A stretch of DNA of 64,000 bases from Pristiophorus japonicus (taxonomy: Eukaryota): the NCBI RefSeq assembly GCF_044704955.1, contig NC_091989.1, positions 85,684,001 through 85,748,000 of the forward strand. The letters run 5' to 3'. The notes under the pieces were generated by a model. That model was not told where the DNA came from. It ran no database searches and was given only the letters and a program-made list of their open reading frames with translations. The first letter of the stretch is position 1. Every line of letters starts with the position of its first letter. Both the position numbers and the translations under genes were made by a program. Shown piece by piece: positions 2,940-16,565 of this stretch.

Positions 2940-2991
2940 TTGAAACAGGCACTCAATATCTGTCTTCTGCTGCAACCATTTAACTATACAG
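2940..2991 (+). CDS. Putative leader (signal peptide) exon of V-C1-ITIM receptor copy 1
   Basis: TTG AAA CAG GCA CTC AAT ATC TGT CTT CTG CTG CAA CCA TTT AAC TAT ACA G|gtcagt = (L/M)KQALNICLLLQPFNYT. The phase-1 donor fits the V exon. No in-frame ATG before the upstream TAG at 2898-2900. Confidence 0.55.
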
Positions 2992-3273
2992 GTCAGTTAT
3001 TTAAAATAATAATACTCTTTTAATTAAATCTATGCTCATTAATTCATGTATTTTTAATTTAAATTTCTGATTTATGTCAGTTGCTAAAATAGCCTTTGTA
3101 CCTTCCTACCTCTAATTAAATTTCGATTAAATGGTGGAACAGCCAACATTGGAATTTAACATTAACATCGATTTGCAAATGAAATTCACAATTGAAATGG
3201 TATCCAAATTTCATATTGTCCTGCGTAAACTGGTAAAATAATAAAGGCTGGAATTTTTGCCGGGTTTACAAAT

Positions 3274-4200
3274 GAACATACGAATTAGGAGCAGGAGTCG
3301 GCCATTCGGCCCCCCGAGCCTTCTCTGACTTTCAATAAGATCATGGCCGATTGTGTACCTCAAGTCCACATTCCTGGAGTATCCCAATATCCTTTACTTT
3401 CATTACTATAAACAAAATCTATCAATCTCTGTCTTGCATATATTCAAAGACTGAGCCCCCACACTCTGGGGTAGATAATTCCACTGATTCAGCACCCTCT
3501 GAGTGAATAAATTTCTCCTCATCTCAGATCCAATTGACCGACCCCTTATTCTGAGATTTTGACCGCTGGTGCTAGACTCCTCAGCCAGAGGAATCATCCG
3601 CCCTGCATCTACCTTGTTAACCCTATATAAATTGTGTACGTTTCAATGAGATCATCTCTGATTCGTTTAAATTCTAGACAATATAGGCCTCGTCTTCTCA
3701 ATCTCTCCTTATAGGACTATACCCCATCCAAGGAATCAATCTGGTGAACCTTCGTTGTACTCCATCAATGGCAAGTATAACCTTCCTTAGGTCAGGTGAC
3801 CAAAGCTGTACACAATATTCCAGGTGCGGTCTCACCAGGGCCCTTTATAATTGCTGTAAGACCTCTTTACTATAACACTCAAATTCTCATGTAATAAAGA
3901 CCAAAATAACATTTGCTTTATTATTTGCCTGCTGTGCCGGCATGGTAACTTTCAGTGATTCCTGCAGCAGGACATCAAGGTCCCTCTAAACACCAAAATT
4001 TCCCAATCTCTCACCATTTATAAATATTCTCACTTTGTATTCTTCCTACCAAAGTGTATAACTTCACATTTTGCCACTTTATAATCCATTTGCAATTTGC
4101 TTGCCCAATTATATGCCTCTGTATATCCCCTTGAAGGCCATGTGCCTATTCCTCTCAACTTTCCTTCGCACTTAGCATGGTATTATCAGCAAACTTGGGT
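3274..4200 (-). mobile_element. Decayed CR1 3' fragment
   Basis: ORF with LRIRGRSIGSEMRRNLFTQRVLNQWN; typical CR1 3' UTR. Confidence 0.85.
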
Positions 4201-4353
4201 ATATCAGATATATACGCAAATATTCACCTGGATTTATGCTGAGATATCTGGAAAATAAAGTAAAATTGATAAGCCATTTTCATGTTGGGATTAAGGACTA
4301 TAGGACTAATTTACATTTCTGGCAGTAGGTAATTAACGTGATTTCATTAGATT

Positions 4354-4489
4354 GTAGTTAGGGACAGTGGGAATTTCGCTCATTCATTAATGTGCACCAC
4401 TAATTAGATGGCGACGCATTTGGTTACCTTAAGAGTTAGTAACTCCCGCCGTTTACCCGTGCTTTATTGAATTACTCACGTTGACACTC
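4354..4489 (-). pseudogene. Decayed 28S rRNA fragment spanning the R2 target region
   Basis: Reverse complement reads ...GGGTAAACGGCGGGAGTTACTAACTCTTAAGGTAACCAAATGCGTCGCCATCTAATTAG...ATTCCCACTGTCCCTAACTAC, matching the conserved 28S segment with substitutions. Confidence 0.85.
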
Positions 4490-5189
4490 TTATCTTAAAT
4501 CCTGAAGCATGGAATGTTGGGCAGGCGAGCTACCATGACTGAACTGCAATGATTCTGCAAAGCAATTTTATTCCAATGGCTTGTTTAATTTCAAGAATTT
4601 GTGACTTTTTCACCTCGGCCTCAGGTTTTAGGAGTCAGCAGCGAGCATCGCATGCTGACGCTGCTTGTCTCTACGCAGCTCTAGATCCACTTTGGAACCT
4701 GACTGGCTAGTTATACTGGCACTGGAGCCCTGAATCCAACTGTCATCAGAGTGTATAACAAAATTGCTCATATACACCGTTCATATCATGTTCTGAAATT
4801 CATGAAAGCAACTCGAAGATCAACTTGAATGTCTCCACAGTTATTCCATCTACATTCAATAACCTCCTCTACCACAATTTAATCATGTAAGCGTGTCTTA
4901 TAATTGTGGCTCAGTCCAACAATCTATCAGCCTTCCTAACTTCCAATATATGTTTCTTGCACAAAGCAGTTCGAGAGATATGGACATTGGTAATCATTTT
5001 TCGTTAAACAATCGGCCCAATTAGCAGATTCTGCAGAACCAAAAAGAGTGAAGTTATGCGGTATTCGACCTTACTGGCGGCCGAAGAACGTACTTGTGAG
5101 CTCATGCACAATTTTATGAAGATCGTTCCAATTTGCTTTAACTACAGTGTCCAAGTTGCTGCTACTGGTTCTGTTCACAACTACCTGGG

Positions 5190-5775
5190 CAGATCATCTG
5201 AAAAGGGCATGCAGTTCTCCACTAATATGGTTGACTCTCATAGAAATTTTTAAAATTCTGACGGATTTAGACAGGTTAGATGCAGGAAGAATGTTCCCAA
5301 TGTTGGGGAAGTCCAGAAGCAAGGGTCACAGTCGAAGAACCGAGATGAGGAGAAACTTCTTCAACCAGAGAGTGGTACACCTGTGGAATTCTCTACCACA
5401 GAAAGTTGTTGATGCTAATTCACTAAATATATTCAAAAAGGAGTTAGATGTAGCCCTTATTACTAGGGGGATCAAGGGGTATGGCGAGAAAGCAGGAATG
5501 GGGTACTGAATTTGTATGTTCAGCCATGAACTCATTGAAAGGCGGTGCAGGCTCGAAGGGCAGAATGGCCCTCTCCTGCACCTATTTTCTATGTTTCTAA
5601 GTTTCTATGACTCTTAACTTGTCTCGAAATGGTCTAGCAGGCTACTAATTTGTCCACTACGAAAAGTTGCAGCGTTTCAAGAAGGCGGCTTACCACCATC
5701 TTCTCGAGGGTAATTTGTGATGGGGAAACAGGTGGCTTTGCCAGCGACGCCCACATCCCGTGAATGAATAAAAAG
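5190..5775 (+). mobile_element. SINE-like repeat interrupted by a young CR1 3' fragment (~5238-5609)
   Basis: The CR1 piece is nearly identical to 10920-11305 and sits within ATGGTTGACT|CTTAACT; the SINE ends GCCCACATCCCGTGAATGAATAAAAA. Confidence 0.7.
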
Positions 5776-14609: not shown

Positions 14610-14653
14610 GCGACAAGAGAAATTCAGTAAAGACTTCTCATCATGATAAACGG
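14610..14653 (+). CDS. First cytoplasmic exon, copy 1
   Basis: ttttccaacag|GC...CGG|gtaatg, phase 1-0; (G)DKRNSVKTSHHDKR. Confidence 0.75.
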
Positions 14654-14995
14654 GTAATGTCAACTAAAAATTTCAGACTTGGCACTCAAAAGTCTTCGCT
14701 TTTAACTATTTTTGAATTTAGTCTTGTTCAATAAAAATACACAATTTATTCTATAAAGATTGAAATATAGAATAATGAACAAAGCGTTTAGAAACTCTCG
14801 TGCCCATTTAAGTAGTTGGATACATTGTTAATTTTAAAGGTCATTAATTAAATAATTATAATATATTTGTTACGCAAACAGCAATTTTGCTAGTCATGTG
14901 ACTAGTAGTTGACTGCAACGGTTCCTGAGTTAAATATCAAATTACACACTAAACAAATGACAGCATCGACAATGCTCGTTTAATAAAGGAAAAGT

Positions 14996-15225
14996 ACAAG
15001 ACTCACTACCTATACTCTATAATTCTCTGATACAGAAGAATTACAAGATTCACTACTTATACTCTATTTCACCCTGTTTAACTCTGCAAAAAGGCGTTCC
15101 AAAAGGTGCTCATTTCTGCTCAAAAAACTAACTCTGTTCAATTCAACACTGTTTAACACTGGAGAAAGGCATTCAAAAAGGTGTTCCTTTCCACTCAAAA
15201 TACTAACTCTGTCAACTCAATTTAC
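14996..15225. repeat. Two small local tandem duplications (~47 bp and ~75 bp units)
   Basis: TACAAGA.TCACTAC.TATACTCTAT occurs twice; AC.CTGTTTAAC.CTG...AAGGTG.TC.TTTC..CTCAAAA.ACTAACTCTGT starts at ~15071 and ~15146. Confidence 0.7.
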
Positions 15226-16177
15226 TCCCATAATTTACTTTTGTTATTTGCACCACCACATTCTGCATTAATTGGATGGTGCATTTCGCTAATTTAAAAA
15301 TATTAACTAGAGTATAGCTCTTATTAATTTTCTACGAAACCCTTTGCGACATCTAGAGTATCCCGAGGCCTTTATGTAAATGCATTGACTCCTTCGGCTG
15401 CCCCTCACACTTCACTGACTCAAATATTAGCATGCAGAGTCGACAACCGAAATAATGATATCCCCTTCTTATCGGAGGCATATTTATATAACGAGTTGTC
15501 TATGTACGAATGCATTTGTTTGATTATTTACTTTAATTCCTTTATTTATGTAACCGTTTACAACTCATATGGGACAGTTTATATTTTCTCATCAGTTAGA
15601 TACACAGAACACCCTAAGCTAAGGAAGATGATATTGAATTACTTGCGTCCACTTATTTCTTTATATTTTAATTCCGAACTAGTCAACGTTCGAACCACAA
15701 GTGTTAGTAATAGTTGCAAAGTACATTCACGCCAAATCAACAATGAATTATCGAGCTATGTTGAATGAATTTTAAAGTTATAGCACAATGTACTGAAACA
15801 GAACATCATACATATAAATAGCACAAATTGATTATTTTTCACTGACATTTAAATCTTATTTTTCCAGAAATCGAAAAATTGCAGAGGTTCTCAGATAGCT
15901 TTCAAACTATTGTACAATGAAATGCATTAATTTACGAGCAGTTAGGAATCTTCAAATCGAGAGGTTTTTGATTATTATTGCCTGTCTAGCTGTATATCAC
16001 AGAAATAAATAGCAATTATTTGATTTACTTTTAATTAAAGTAAAAGTGAAAAATAATATATTGATTTTCAATGATAATACGACTATGCCGCCTCAATTTT
16101 TTGTTATCTGTAATGGTTTCTTGATTCTTGAAACTTGAGAAAAAGAAATTCAATGAATGCAAATATTTACTTTCTAG

Positions 16178-16288
16178 GAAGAGCGAGAGGTAGATGAGGA
16201 GAAGCTGGCATATGCATCTCTGGATCTGATGGGCTCCAATGAATGAGCAAAATCGAAACAACACAAAGGAAGTACAGTGTATGCAGAG
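16178..16288 (+). CDS. Second cytoplasmic exon, copy 1 (ITIM LAYASL, TGA at 16244-16246, then TVYAE)
   Basis: tttctag|GAA...GAG|gtacag, 111 nt, phase 0-0; EEREVDEEKLAYASLDLMGSNE*AKSKQHKGSTVYAE. Confidence 0.85.
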
Positions 16289-16436
16289 GTACAGCTCAAT
16301 TCACATGTGGAAACAATAAACTTACCAATCACAATAAGTTTGGTTTTGAGAAGACATTGAAAATTAATTTGATGTAATTTTCATTTATCTTTTTTGAGGA
16401 AAAATTTAAACATTATTCTTAATGTTTGTTCTACAG

Positions 16437-16565
16437 ACCAAACAAAGTGCAGCTGATAGGAAACTGACTTACATTGCTCTGAATTTCACTGGTTCCAAGA
16501 AAACGTCGAGACCTAACCACAAAGAATCAAATCTGGTGTACGCAGCGGTGAAGACCACCAGCTAA
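16437..16565 (+). pseudogene. Terminal cytoplasmic exon, copy 1 (ITIMs LTYIAL and LVYAAV); open, but downstream of the premature stop
   Basis: ctacag|ACC... TKQSAADRKLTYIALNFTGSKKTSRPNHKESNLVYAAVKTTS*. Confidence 0.82.

What the first reader, a model, noticed from the sequence alone, without database searches (positions are those of the whole stretch)
2940..16565. Non-rearranging V(J-like)-C1-TM-ITIM receptor hidden across seven small exons
Seen: seven exons with canonical AG/GT sites and compatible phases (1,1,1,1,0,0) give leader-V-C1-TM-cytoplasmic tail. The V exon contains its own G strand (IGKLTCEQLVV, loosely like J-type GxGTxLxV) and no RSS follows it. The ancestral tail has four tyrosine motifs in two similar exons (LAYASL, TVYAE, LTYIAL, LVYAAV). 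Established: C1-set domains are largely confined to Ig, TCR, MHC, beta2-microglobulin, tapasin, SIRP and a few B7-like proteins; SIRP-alpha has a paired four-tyrosine tail; germline-joined V-C1 genes resemble the proposed antigen-receptor precursor. Inference: a lineage-expanded inhibitory immune receptor family; orthology cannot be assigned by eye.
Basis: partly seen in the sequence, partly recalled or inferred. Interest (0 to 1): 0.78.

Follow-up and report, generated by a model that had tools for sequence, protein, structure and literature searches.

The report
Shark SIRP-like receptor gene, tail truncated
This is one more copy of a shark immune-receptor gene family resembling mammalian SIRP-alpha (one variable-like domain, one C1 constant domain, a membrane anchor and an inhibitory tail); this copy has a stop codon in its tail, and the copy next to it is a dead gene, so it is ordinary.

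Summary
The gene is real, but one exon was misplaced. The proposed leader at 2940-2990 has no ATG. The true split leader is at 5918-5972.

The C1 exon passes Pfam C1-set. The V exon matches four shark proteins at E 2e-26 to 2e-34. All relatives are unnamed or contradictorily auto-named predictions from sharks, rays and a chimaera. The nearest outside relatives are bird and mammal SIRP-alpha.

This copy is damaged:
- An in-frame TGA at 16244-16246 cuts the tail after the first ITIM.
- Both canonical V-domain cysteines are gone.
- The J-like motif of the wider family (GNGTGS) has decayed.

A tandem paralogue at 26.5-43.4 kb is a clear pseudogene. Gene 1 has changed about half as fast as that pseudogene (18 against 35 polarised replacements), so it died recently or still works in altered form.

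No RNA run was listed. Earlier notes of this scan describe the same family at eight or more other places in this genome. Verdict: a new member of a known kind, of low interest.

The parts
5918..5972 (+). Exon 1, the true split leader: ATG, 18 codons plus 1 base, phase-1 donor CAG|gtacac.
   Evidence: sequence; splice sites; matches the N-termini of P0002, P0099 and P0097 at 65, 59 and 52% identity.
2940..2990 (+). It is not an exon of this gene: it has no ATG and no homology.
   Evidence: sequence read in frame; no relative matches here.
6321..6632 (+). Exon 2, the V-like Ig domain with its own G strand. The canonical B-strand Cys is Tyr (ITFRY). The F-strand Cys is shifted by one place (GMYCS). 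The G strand reads IGKLTCEQLVV.
7568..11213 (+). LINE inside intron 2, in the same orientation as the gene: GDSL-esterase ORF, endonuclease ORF and reverse-transcriptase ORF.
   Evidence: Lipase_GDSL_2 5.5e-14, Exo_endo_phos 2.3e-13, RVT_1 1.3e-33.
12499..12738 (-). Two tandem full-length 5S rRNA copies in intron 2, about 120 bp upstream of the C1 exon acceptor.
   Evidence: RF00001, 76.9 and 53.2 bits.
12859..13164 (+). Exon 3, an intact C1-set domain (LQC ... FYP ... LTW ... LYEVISS ... YTCHVHH).
   Evidence: (C1-set 1.6e-8, 35.2 bits against a cut-off of 21).
13963..14076 (+). Exon 4, stalk end plus transmembrane segment with a mid-membrane arginine (AGCIGRAVII).
   Evidence: (gene 2 and all but one outgroup in the TM alignment lack Arg in this column; P0098 has it; 64% identity to P0002, E 3e-8).
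14610..14653 (+). Exon 5, a 44-nt cytoplasmic exon (GDKRNSVKTSHHDKR). It takes the phase from 1 to 0.
   Evidence: (weak match, E 0.59). My own count from the sequence gives 9 of 15 residues shared with P0002's GGKRTSLNTSQHADR; no call computed this.
16178..16288 (+). Exon 6, the first tail repeat: LAYASL, then an in-frame TGA at 16244-16246, then TVYAE.
   Evidence: and 85 (39.3 bits to the tail-unit HMM with X at the stop).
16437..16565 (+). Exon 7, the second tail repeat: LTYIAL, LVYAAV, stop TAA. It is intact but lies downstream of the exon 6 stop.
   Evidence: 62.5% identity to P0002, E 3e-10; 54.4 bits; 0 of 500 shuffles reach it.
26504..43396 (+). Gene 2, a tandem paralogue and pseudogene. 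Parts: V 26504-26815; C1 copy A 28965-29270; C1 copy B about 33272-33570; TM 34351-34464; exon 5 remnant near 35000; exon 6 43091-43201 with TAA at 43160-43162; exon 7 remnant 43321-43396. No leader was found.

Best explanation
The locus at 5918-16565 is a structurally complete seven-exon, non-rearranging Ig-superfamily receptor gene. Its parts are a split leader, one short V-like domain, one C1-set domain, a transmembrane segment and two tyrosine-motif tail exons. It belongs to a large family found in sharks, rays and chimaeras, whose closest named relatives elsewhere are the SIRPs.

Inferred mechanism for intact family members, by analogy with SIRP-alpha: the V domain binds a cell-surface ligand, and the C1 domain acts as a spacer. 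Tyrosines in the repeated tail units (xLTYAALxL ... xVYAxx) are phosphorylated and recruit SH2 phosphatases that damp the cell's activation. Sister copies with a membrane arginine and a short tail signal the opposite way through an adaptor.

This copy cannot make the full tail. A TGA in exon 6 ends the frame at 299 codons, after one ITIM (LAYASL). The copy has also lost both canonical V cysteines and gained a mid-membrane arginine.

My odds for this copy:
- about 50%, a recently disabled unprocessed pseudogene;
- about 35%, still expressed as a shortened or exon-6-skipping inhibitory receptor;
- about 15%, on its way to an activating form.

The neighbour, gene 2, is dead. What is shown: the exon structure, the family membership and the lesions. 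What is inferred: ligand binding, phosphatase recruitment and expression.
For: Exon model. All 12 splice sites are canonical and the exon lengths sum to 1071 nt, or 357 codons. That equals the length of the closest full-length relative, P0002.

Collinear tblastn matches of P0002 to all seven exons:
- leader, 65% identity
- V, 61%, E 8e-38
- C1, 59%, E 4e-35
- TM, 64%, E 3e-8
- exon 5, weak, E 0.59
- exon 6, 49%, E 0.002, alignment includes the stop
- exon 7, 62.5%, E 3e-10

Family membership.
- The V exon found 83 proteins at E <= 1e-3, and the best four are shark proteins at 56-66% identity.
- The ten clusters I looked up all come from sharks or a chimaera. Their names are 'uncharacterized', 'tyrosine-protein phosphatase non-receptor type substrate 1-like', 'tapasin-related protein-like' and 'immunoglobulin lambda-1 light chain-like'.
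- All 23 of 23 aligned members hit both V-set and C1-set.
- In a V-domain tree, genes 1 and 2 pair (SH-aLRT 98) inside a clade of 15 shark and ray rows (support 100).

Link to SIRP.
- A profile of 23 members found 39 proteins. Of these, 26 are from cartilaginous fish. The next nine are eight bird proteins (five named SIRP-like by their sources, three named only 'Ig-like domain-containing protein') and one rodent SIRP-alpha, at E 1e-43 to 2e-26. One unnamed protein and three teleost proteins follow. The top bird protein shows the V-C1-C1-TM-tail layout in its sequence.
- P0046 aligns with rodent SIRP-alpha from the C1 domain through the TM to all four tail tyrosines in one BLASTP segment (E 8e-13).
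- hhalign of the family profile against a SIRP alignment gives 99.1% probability over 199 columns.
- An HMM of the shark tail units hits rodent and duck SIRP-alpha tails twice each (15.9 and 12.1 bits; 17.4 and 16.2 bits). None of 500 shuffles of either tail exceeds 6.3 bits.

Lesions.

Relative rate. Polarised replacements are 18 in gene 1, 35 in gene 2 and 15 unresolved (binomial p = 0.027). Columns conserved in at least 10 of 12 orthologues are changed in gene 1 alone at 4 sites, in gene 2 alone at 14 and in both at 8.
Against: - No expression evidence could be obtained: no run was listed, so read laying could not be used.
- Between genes 1 and 2, exons are no better conserved than introns (84-88% against 86-88%). 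Pooled dN/dS is 1.33 (18.5 synonymous and 80.5 non-synonymous differences). This fits neutral decay of both copies as well as it fits relaxed selection on one.
- The window's V exon reaches no Pfam cut-off and gets no V-set hit.
- A profile of V domains finds I-set proteins (titin, Robo, contactin) first in the PDB. Neither SIRP nor NKp30 is in its top 60 of 2464 hits.
- The ectodomain is no closer to SIRP than to antibody light chains. Best V-C1 stretch scores are kappa 69.8, lambda 64.7, SIRP-alpha d1-d2 62.1 and UrIg2 50.4 bits. The label 'SIRP-like' therefore rests on the tail and the membrane-bound, non-rearranging build.
- The window's exon 7 alone gives no significant BLASTP match to rodent SIRP-alpha (best E 1.7).
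- The tail HMM was built from units picked with a tyrosine-motif pattern, so any ITIM-bearing tail might score.
- SIRPs have two C1 domains; this gene has one.
Confidence: 0.85

Rival explanations
1. Gene 1 is a working gene. It would make either a 299-residue receptor with a single ITIM, or, by skipping the phase-0/phase-0 exon 6, a receptor with the two motifs of exon 7. Its V domain would fold without the canonical disulfide.
For: - All splice sites and the ATG are intact, and six of seven exons are open.
- Gene 1 has half as many polarised replacements as the dead gene 2, and 4 against 14 hits on conserved columns.
- The F-strand Cys is also absent from the otherwise complete Heptranchias model P0097 and was lost before the gene 1 / gene 2 duplication. 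An unpaired B-strand Cys may therefore have been free to change.
- The stop lies 42 nt before the last exon junction. By the usual 50-55 nt rule, which I recall and did not test, the transcript would escape nonsense-mediated decay.
- Exon 7 keeps both motifs.
Against: - There is a nonsense codon in a conserved tail unit.
- The V exon gets no V-set hit.
- Pairwise dN/dS is not below 1.
- No predicted protein of this locus appeared among the 18 or 39 hits. This is weak evidence, because those searches are capped by shared words.
- There are no RNA data.
Confidence: 0.35
2. Gene 1 is being converted from an inhibitory to an activating receptor, as happens in paired-receptor families. It has gained a mid-membrane arginine that could dock a signalling adaptor, and a stop codon has removed most of the inhibitory tail.
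For: - Gene 1 has Arg where gene 2 and all but one outgroup in the TM alignment do not. The exception, the Stegostoma protein P0098, is named 'signal-regulatory protein beta-1-like'. It has Arg in the same column and a degenerate tail that also keeps the first LTYAAL.
- The Heterodontus pair P0001 and P0002 are 87% identical. P0001 has a TM Arg and a short tail without motifs.
- Other members use a different R-containing TM exon with a short tail: P0003, P0097 and P0099.
Against: - The first ITIM (LAYASL) is kept.
- The TM exon shows 13 non-synonymous against 1 synonymous differences between the two copies. That equally fits decay.
- No adaptor or expression data are available.
- The V-domain changes argue for loss of constraint rather than a preserved binding domain.
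Confidence: 0.15
3. The gene is a relic of the antigen-receptor precursor lineage (UrIg/UrIg2, NCR3/NKp30 or PRARP type) rather than a SIRP-type receptor.
For: - It has a V plus C1 build without rearrangement.
- Its ectodomain scores as well against antibody light chains as against SIRP-alpha.
- UrIg2 (PDB 9dmx) is among the top four PDB hits of the family profile.
- Distant members carry a GNGTG motif in the G strand.
Against: - UrIg has three C1 domains and is secreted. UrIg2 has nine or more C1 domains (PMC12227049, sections 4 and 7 read). This gene has one C1, a TM and an ITIM tail.
- The UrIg2 V-C1 stretch scores lowest of the four compared, at 50.4 bits.
- No NCR3- or NKp30-named protein appeared among the 9 hits of the V-only profile search or the 39 hits of the full profile search.
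- NKp30 is not in the top 60 PDB hits of the V profile.
- PRARP could not be tested.
Confidence: 0.04

Closest known systems
SIRP-alpha (PTPNS1/SHPS-1) and the SIRP family of tetrapods
   Same: - Both are non-rearranging type I membrane receptors with an N-terminal V-type domain followed by C1-set domain(s).
- The family tail has two repeats of an ITIM-like motif plus a distal tyrosine. These align with the four SIRP-alpha tyrosines.
- Activating sister forms exist with a charged TM residue and a short tail, like SIRP-beta.
- Bird and mammal SIRPs are the best hits outside cartilaginous fish.
   Different: - This gene has one C1 domain, not two.
- The V domain is short, with 55 residues between the cysteine positions. 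By sequence it scores as I-set or Ig_3 at least as well as V-set.
- The ectodomain is no closer to SIRP than to Ig light chains.
- Orthology, synteny and CD47 binding are untested.
- In this copy the tail is cut by a stop.
RefSeq and UniProt predicted proteins of sharks, rays and chimaera (for example XP_067905931.1 = P0002 and XP_067905013.1 = P0001 of Heterodontus francisci; XP_067853494.1 = P0007 of Heptranchias perlo; XP_007902825.2 of Callorhinchus milii)
   Same: - The exon-by-exon architecture and the total length (357 codons) are the same.
- Identity is 56-67% in the V domain and 59-70% in the C1 domain for the nearest clade.
- The tail units are the same.
   Different: Compared with those models, this copy carries:
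- a premature stop;
- loss of both canonical V cysteines;
- a TM arginine.

The database entries are computer predictions under contradictory names. I found no experimental paper on them.
UrIg and UrIg2 (non-rearranging shark VJ-C1 genes; PMC12227049)
   Same: - Both are non-rearranging, with the V domain and its G strand in one exon, a split leader and C1-type constant domains.
- Both are confined to cartilaginous fish.
   Different: - UrIg has three C1 domains and is secreted. UrIg2 has nine to eleven C1 domains.
- Neither has an ITIM tail.
- Sequence similarity is weaker than to light chains or SIRP.
NKp30 / NCR3
   Same: - Both have a non-rearranging V domain with a G strand in the exon.
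- NKp30 has a membrane arginine (recalled, not from a call), as gene 1 does.
   Different: - NKp30 has no C1 domain (recalled).
- No NCR3-named protein was found by any of my searches.
- NKp30 is not among the top 60 PDB hits of the V profile.
- The shark NCR3 paper (PMC8273117) was not held, so I could not compare with its eight nurse-shark genes.

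Membership tests
Cartilaginous-fish SIRP-like V-C1 receptor family (database-predicted) | The N-terminal Ig domain is homologous to the family's V domain. | tested here: met
   - E 1.9e-34 to 2.1e-26 against four members, at 56-66% identity.
- nested in a clade of 15 rows, support 100.
Cartilaginous-fish SIRP-like V-C1 receptor family (database-predicted) | A single C1-set domain encoded by one phase-1/phase-1 exon. 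| tested here: met
   - C1-set 1.6e-8, above the cut-off.
- 59-70% identity to members.
- both cysteines and the Trp are kept.
Cartilaginous-fish SIRP-like V-C1 receptor family (database-predicted) | A split leader, a TM exon and tail exons built of repeated tyrosine-motif units. | tested here: met
   -.
- exon 7 scores 54.4 bits and exon 6 scores 39.3 bits against the unit HMM.
- The units are present, but the frame is broken by the TGA at 16244-16246.
SIRP family (SIRP-alpha, -beta, -gamma) | An N-terminal V-set domain with a J-like G strand. | tested here: inconclusive
   - The window exon gets no V-set hit, and only one Gly of GxG is left.
- At family level, 23 of 23 members hit V-set, and distant members carry GNGTGSxLxV.
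SIRP family (SIRP-alpha, -beta, -gamma) | Two membrane-proximal C1-set domains (d2, d3). | tested here: not met
   Gene 1 has only one C1 exon. Most relatives also have one. SIRP-alpha aligns with two.
SIRP family (SIRP-alpha, -beta, -gamma) | A cytoplasmic tail with four tyrosines in two paired units that recruit SHP-1 and SHP-2. | tested here: inconclusive
   - The sequence pattern is met at family level.
- In gene 1 all four motifs are present in the DNA, but a stop follows the first.
- Exon 7 alone shows no BLASTP match to SIRP-alpha.
- Phosphatase binding cannot be tested here.
SIRP family (SIRP-alpha, -beta, -gamma) | Orthology by synteny, and CD47 binding. | not testable with these tools
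NKp30 / NCR3 | A single V(J) domain with no constant domain, plus sequence kinship of the V domain. | tested here: not met
   - A C1 exon is present.
- None of the 9 hits or the 39 hits is named NCR3.
- NKp30 is not in the top 60.
- The domain layout of NKp30 is recalled, not taken from a call.
UrIg / UrIg2 | A VJ domain followed by three or more C1 domains. | tested here: not met
   This gene has one C1 exon. For UrIg and UrIg2 see PMC12227049, sections 4 and 7. UrIg2 scores 50.4 bits for V-C1.
Rearranging antigen receptors (Ig, TCR) | A V segment flanked by an RSS, with a separate J segment. | tested here: not met
   The G strand is inside the V exon, which ends at a splice donor. No RSS-like site is adjacent.
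PRARP (chicken non-rearranging V-C1 genes, Fu et al. 2019) | Sequence kinship and architecture as described in that paper. | not testable with these tools
   The paper is not held. No PRARP-named protein appeared. I saw PRARP named only in passages of PMC10751288 and PMC11599192.

The most novel reading that the evidence does not exclude
Gene 1 is a live snapshot of an inhibitory-to-activating receptor switch: a newly gained membrane arginine plus a tail-truncating stop. It would sit inside a still-undescribed cartilaginous-fish family that is the single-C1 sister of SIRP and lies as near to antibody light chains as to SIRP. On this reading the family, rather than this copy, would be a third non-rearranging V-C1 lineage beside UrIg and NCR3 that bears on what the antigen-receptor precursor looked like.
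Probability: 0.12. Interest if true: 0.45.

Novelty: new member of a known kind. Interest (0 to 1): 0.2.

Why it matters
Paired inhibitory and activating receptors with a V-C1 ectodomain are rare outside Ig, TCR and SIRP. A family of them across sharks, rays and chimaeras bears on two questions: how old the SIRP type of innate checkpoint is, and what non-rearranging V-C1 genes looked like near the origin of antigen receptors.

This locus adds little to that. It is one damaged or altered copy next to a dead one, the family is already predicted in public annotations, and this scan has met the family repeatedly in the same genome. Its modest use is as a dated example of birth-and-death turnover: tandem duplication, retroelement invasion, independent nonsense mutations in the same tail exon, and gain of a membrane arginine.

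Tried and rejected
Rejected. It has no ATG, no similarity to gene 2's upstream region and no match to any relative. My own hydrophobic-leader scan did not rank the true leader in its top 15. Homology found it.
- **RNA evidence.** The look-up of sequencing runs listed no run, so read laying could not be used.
- **Structure.** I could not test whether the two remaining V cysteines could pair.
- **Outgroup DNA for a branch test.** I polarised changes at protein level instead.
- **NKp30 kinship.** A V-only profile search in a length range that includes NKp30 gave 9 hits, all cartilaginous-fish family members. I rejected NKp30 as the family, with the caveat that the search works by shared words.
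- **UrIg / UrIg2.** Rejected on domain number.
- **PRARP.** Could not be tested.
- **An alternative 'activating' TM exon** of the P0097, P0003 and P0099 type. No tblastn hit in the window.
- **A leader for gene 2.** None found.
- **Literature.** Six searches found no paper describing this shark family.
  - PMC12227049: I read the outline, sections 4 and 7, and passages.
  - PMC10751288, PMC12272517 and PMC11599192: I read passages only.
  - Not held: PMC8273117 (Kinlein 2021, shark NCR3), PMC3709836 (Flajnik 2012), PMC10530332 (UrIg 2023) and pmid 30770416 (Fu 2019, PRARP). Any of these may describe related genes.
  - I did not ask for supplementary files. Table S1 and figs S1-S2 of PMC12227049 might bear on the comparison.
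- **Joined step.** I did not search, translate or print a joined spliced model. All searches with window sequence were exon by exon.

Full report
**What is in the sequence.** On the + strand between 5918 and 16565 lie seven exons, all with canonical AG acceptors and GT donors and with phases 1,1,1,1,0,0:

| Exon | Coordinates | Content |
|---|---|---|
| 1 | 5918-5972 | leader |
| 2 | 6321-6632 | V-like domain |
| 3 | 12859-13164 | C1 domain |
| 4 | 13963-14076 | stalk end and TM |
| 5 | 14610-14653 | small cytoplasmic exon |
| 6 | 16178-16288 | first tail unit |
| 7 | 16437-16565 | second tail unit, TAA |

The exon lengths add to 1071 nt, or 357 codons, the length of the closest full-length relative, P0002. 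I only summed lengths.

**The leader.** Read in the required frame it has no ATG, and nothing matches it. The real leader, MIMNGSLWGMCFLGSFYS plus one base, sits 348 bp upstream of the V exon. It matches the N-termini of three relatives at 52-65% identity. This gives the 'split leader' typical of V genes.

**Domain identity.**
- The C1 exon passes Pfam's C1-set threshold (E 1.6e-8, 35.2 bits against a cut-off of 21). Its best PDB matches are Ig constant domains, shark IgNAR, MHC class II beta-2 and SIRP-alpha.
- The V exon reaches no Pfam cut-off. It scores Ig_3 at 20.7 bits, I-set at 16.9 and ig at 16.8, with no V-set hit at E <= 1. Alone, it finds only titin-type I-set domains weakly in the PDB.
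- The V exon is nonetheless a genuine member of a family. Against 1.84 billion representative proteins it found 83 hits at E <= 1e-3. The best four are shark proteins at 56-66% identity (E 1.9e-34 to 2.1e-26).
- No RSS-like site abuts the V exon. The G strand is inside it, and it ends at a GTAAGT donor. That is true of every non-rearranging Ig-superfamily V domain, so it is not in itself remarkable.

**The family.** The relatives are computer-predicted proteins of Heterodontus, Chiloscyllium, Stegostoma, Hemiscyllium, Heptranchias, Scyliorhinus, Mustelus, Cetorhinus, Carcharodon, Rhincodon, Pristis, Hemitrygon, Mobula, Leucoraja and Callorhinchus. Their names are unhelpful or contradictory: 'uncharacterized', 'tyrosine-protein phosphatase non-receptor type substrate 1-like', 'signal-regulatory protein beta-1-like', 'tapasin-related protein-like', 'immunoglobulin lambda-1 light chain-like', 'NCR3 ligand 1-like' and 'CD276 homolog'.

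All 23 of 23 aligned members hit both V-set and C1-set in Pfam. Their consensus reads leader, V, C1, TM, then repeated tail units of the form xLTYAALxLxxSKKTxKPKxxEExTVYAxTK. The V carries YWWKxGE, DSRKxF, DAGxYYC and GNGTGSxLxV. The C1 carries PPTPLKI, CxTxxFYP, LTWYKNG, GLYEVSS and YTCxVSH.

Some members instead end in a different TM segment that contains an arginine and has a short tail (P0003, P0097, P0099). The Heterodontus pair P0001 and P0002 are 87% identical, but P0001 has a TM arginine and no tail motifs. This is the pattern of paired activating and inhibitory receptors.

In a V-domain tree (70 rows, 103 columns, quick search), genes 1 and 2 of the window pair with support 98. They fall inside a clade of 15 shark and ray rows with support 100. 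With so few columns, many deeper forks are unresolved.

**Closest named family.**
- A profile of 23 members found 39 proteins. Of these, 26 are cartilaginous-fish members. The next nine are eight bird proteins (five named SIRP-like, three named only 'Ig-like domain-containing protein') and one rodent SIRP-alpha, at E 1e-43 to 2e-26. One unnamed protein and three teleost proteins follow, at E 1e-11 to 1.5e-5. That search scored only the 8000 candidates sharing most words.
- The top bird hit shows the SIRP-alpha layout in its sequence: V-C1-C1-TM and a four-tyrosine tail.
- P0046 aligns with rodent SIRP-alpha in one BLASTP segment, from the last C1 domain through the TM to the end of the tail. 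All four tyrosines are in register (E 8e-13).
- hhalign of the family against eight SIRPs gives 99.1% probability over 199 columns, covering V plus the first C1.
- An HMM built from the shark tail units hits rodent and duck SIRP-alpha tails twice each, at 12-17 bits. None of 500 composition-matched shuffles of either tail exceeds 6.3 bits.

**Results against the SIRP label.**
- The tail units were picked with a tyrosine-motif pattern, so other ITIM tails might also score.
- The window's exon 7 alone shows no BLASTP match to SIRP-alpha.
- In the PDB, the best V-C1 stretch of the family profile is an antibody kappa chain (69.8 bits). A lambda chain (64.7) follows, then SIRP-alpha d1-d2 (62.1) and UrIg2 (50.4).
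- A V-only profile finds I-set proteins first, with neither SIRP nor NKp30 in its top 60 of 2464 hits.
- SIRPs have two C1 domains; this family usually has one.

I therefore call the family 'SIRP-like' for how it is built and probably works. I do not file it as an orthologue of SIRP.

**Other candidates.**
- UrIg (VJ plus three C1 domains, secreted) and UrIg2 (VJ plus nine to eleven C1 domains, TM) differ in architecture (PMC12227049, sections 4 and 7).
- No NCR3-named protein appeared in any search, including a V-only profile search whose length range covers NKp30 (9 hits, all family members).
- PRARP could not be tested.

**State of this copy.** Compared with 12 orthologues, gene 1 differs in five ways:
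- Tyr replaces the invariant B-strand Cys (12 of 12 orthologues have Cys).
- Ser replaces the F-strand Cys (11 of 12), with a Cys one place earlier.
- The G strand is degraded to GKLTC.
- An Arg sits in the middle of the TM.
- An in-frame TGA lies at 16244-16246, between the first and second tyrosine motifs.

The F-strand change is shared with gene 2 and is also seen in the Heptranchias model P0097, so it predates the duplication. The C1 domain is intact.

The stop would end the product at 299 codons with one ITIM (LAYASL). Exon 6 is phase 0 at both ends, so skipping it would keep the frame and give the two motifs of exon 7. That is an inference.

**Gene 2 (26.5-43.4 kb).** This is a tandem copy whose homology to gene 1 begins 32 nt upstream of the V exon. 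It is dead:
- It has no leader.
- Its C1 exon is duplicated around a stack of retroelements, and both copies have lost the F-strand Cys.
- The second C1 copy carries a 13-nt deletion, a 1-nt deletion and a stop.
- The exon 5 donor is deleted.
- Exon 6 has its own TAA at 43160-43162, one codon away from gene 1's TGA and therefore independent, plus a 1-nt deletion at the donor.
- A 79-nt deletion removes the exon 7 acceptor and first motif.

**Selection.**
- Between the two genes, exons are as diverged as introns: 84.1, 88.1 and 87.4% in exons against 86.0-87.7% in introns. Pooled dN/dS is 1.33, from 18.5 synonymous and 80.5 non-synonymous differences.
- Polarising the amino-acid differences with the 12 orthologues gives 18 changes on the gene 1 lineage, 35 on gene 2 and 15 unresolved (p = 0.027).
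- At columns conserved in at least 10 orthologues, gene 1 alone is changed at 4, gene 2 alone at 14 and both at 8.
- Gene 1 has thus been about half as free to change as a dead gene. This fits recent disablement, or relaxed selection on a still-used receptor.
- I could not separate these readings.

**Surroundings.**
- Intron 2 (6633-12858) holds a LINE in the gene's orientation, with esterase, endonuclease and reverse-transcriptase ORFs (7568-11213).
- Two tandem 5S rRNA copies lie on the minus strand at 12499-12738, about 120 bp upstream of the C1 exon.
- The same 5S-containing repeat flanks gene 2's C1 copies, so its insertion predates the duplication.
- I recognised no conserved neighbouring gene that would allow a synteny test.

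**Prior notes and literature.** Earlier notes of this scan describe the same family at eight or more other places in this genome. One lies about 32 kb upstream of this window and one 287 kb downstream. Two notes report tail-truncated, arginine-bearing copies. These are unchecked AI notes. They agree with what I found independently, and they mean this finding is a repeat. The species name (Japanese sawshark) comes from such a note only. I saw one UniRef entry whose truncated organism name begins 'Pristiopho' (P0111). It belongs to another subfamily and matches this window at only 31-36% identity. Six literature searches found no description of the family. Four likely relevant papers were not held.

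**Verdict.** It is a new, damaged or altered member of a known, database-predicted SIRP-like receptor family, next to a dead paralogue. Interest is low.

Noticed in passing
window 26504-43396: This is a tandem paralogue (gene 2) with many independent lesions:
- no leader;
- a duplicated C1 exon whose two copies have both lost the F-strand Cys;
- frameshifts in C1 copy B;
- the exon 5 donor deleted;
- TAA at 43160-43162 in exon 6;
- a 79-nt deletion at exon 7.
   Followed up: yes
window 16244-16246 and 43160-43162: The two paralogues carry independent nonsense codons in adjacent codons of the same tail exon: TGA in gene 1 and TAA in gene 2. This suggests the exon was dispensable in both.
   Followed up: partly
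window 7568-11213: A LINE lies in intron 2, in the sense orientation. It has a GDSL-esterase-type ORF, an endonuclease ORF and a 775-codon reverse-transcriptase ORF that appears open.
   Followed up: partly
window 12499-12738 (- strand): Two tandem full-length 5S rRNA copies lie about 120 bp upstream of the C1 exon acceptor. Related copies flank gene 2's C1 exons at about 28370-28500, 30806-30943 and 33044-33163.
   Followed up: partly
window 36205-39487: A run of + strand ORFs sits inside gene 2's long intron. One has a weak gag-aspartyl-protease hit (E 8e-4). This looks like a decayed LTR-type retroelement.
   Followed up: partly
proteins P0001 / P0002 (Heterodontus) and P0003, P0097, P0099: The family shows paired forms. 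P0001 and P0002 are 87% identical, but P0001 has a TM arginine and no tail motifs. Other members end in a distinct arginine-containing TM segment with a short tail. No exon of that second type was found in this window.
   Followed up: partly
protein P0097 (Heptranchias perlo): This otherwise complete predicted orthologue also lacks the F-strand cysteine of the V domain (TYFYVAKY). Loss of the canonical V disulfide may therefore be old and tolerated in this branch of sharks.
   Followed up: no
window 13998-14012 (TM exon): Gene 1 has an arginine in the middle of the membrane segment, in the same alignment column as the Stegostoma protein named 'signal-regulatory protein beta-1-like' (P0098).
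   Followed up: partly
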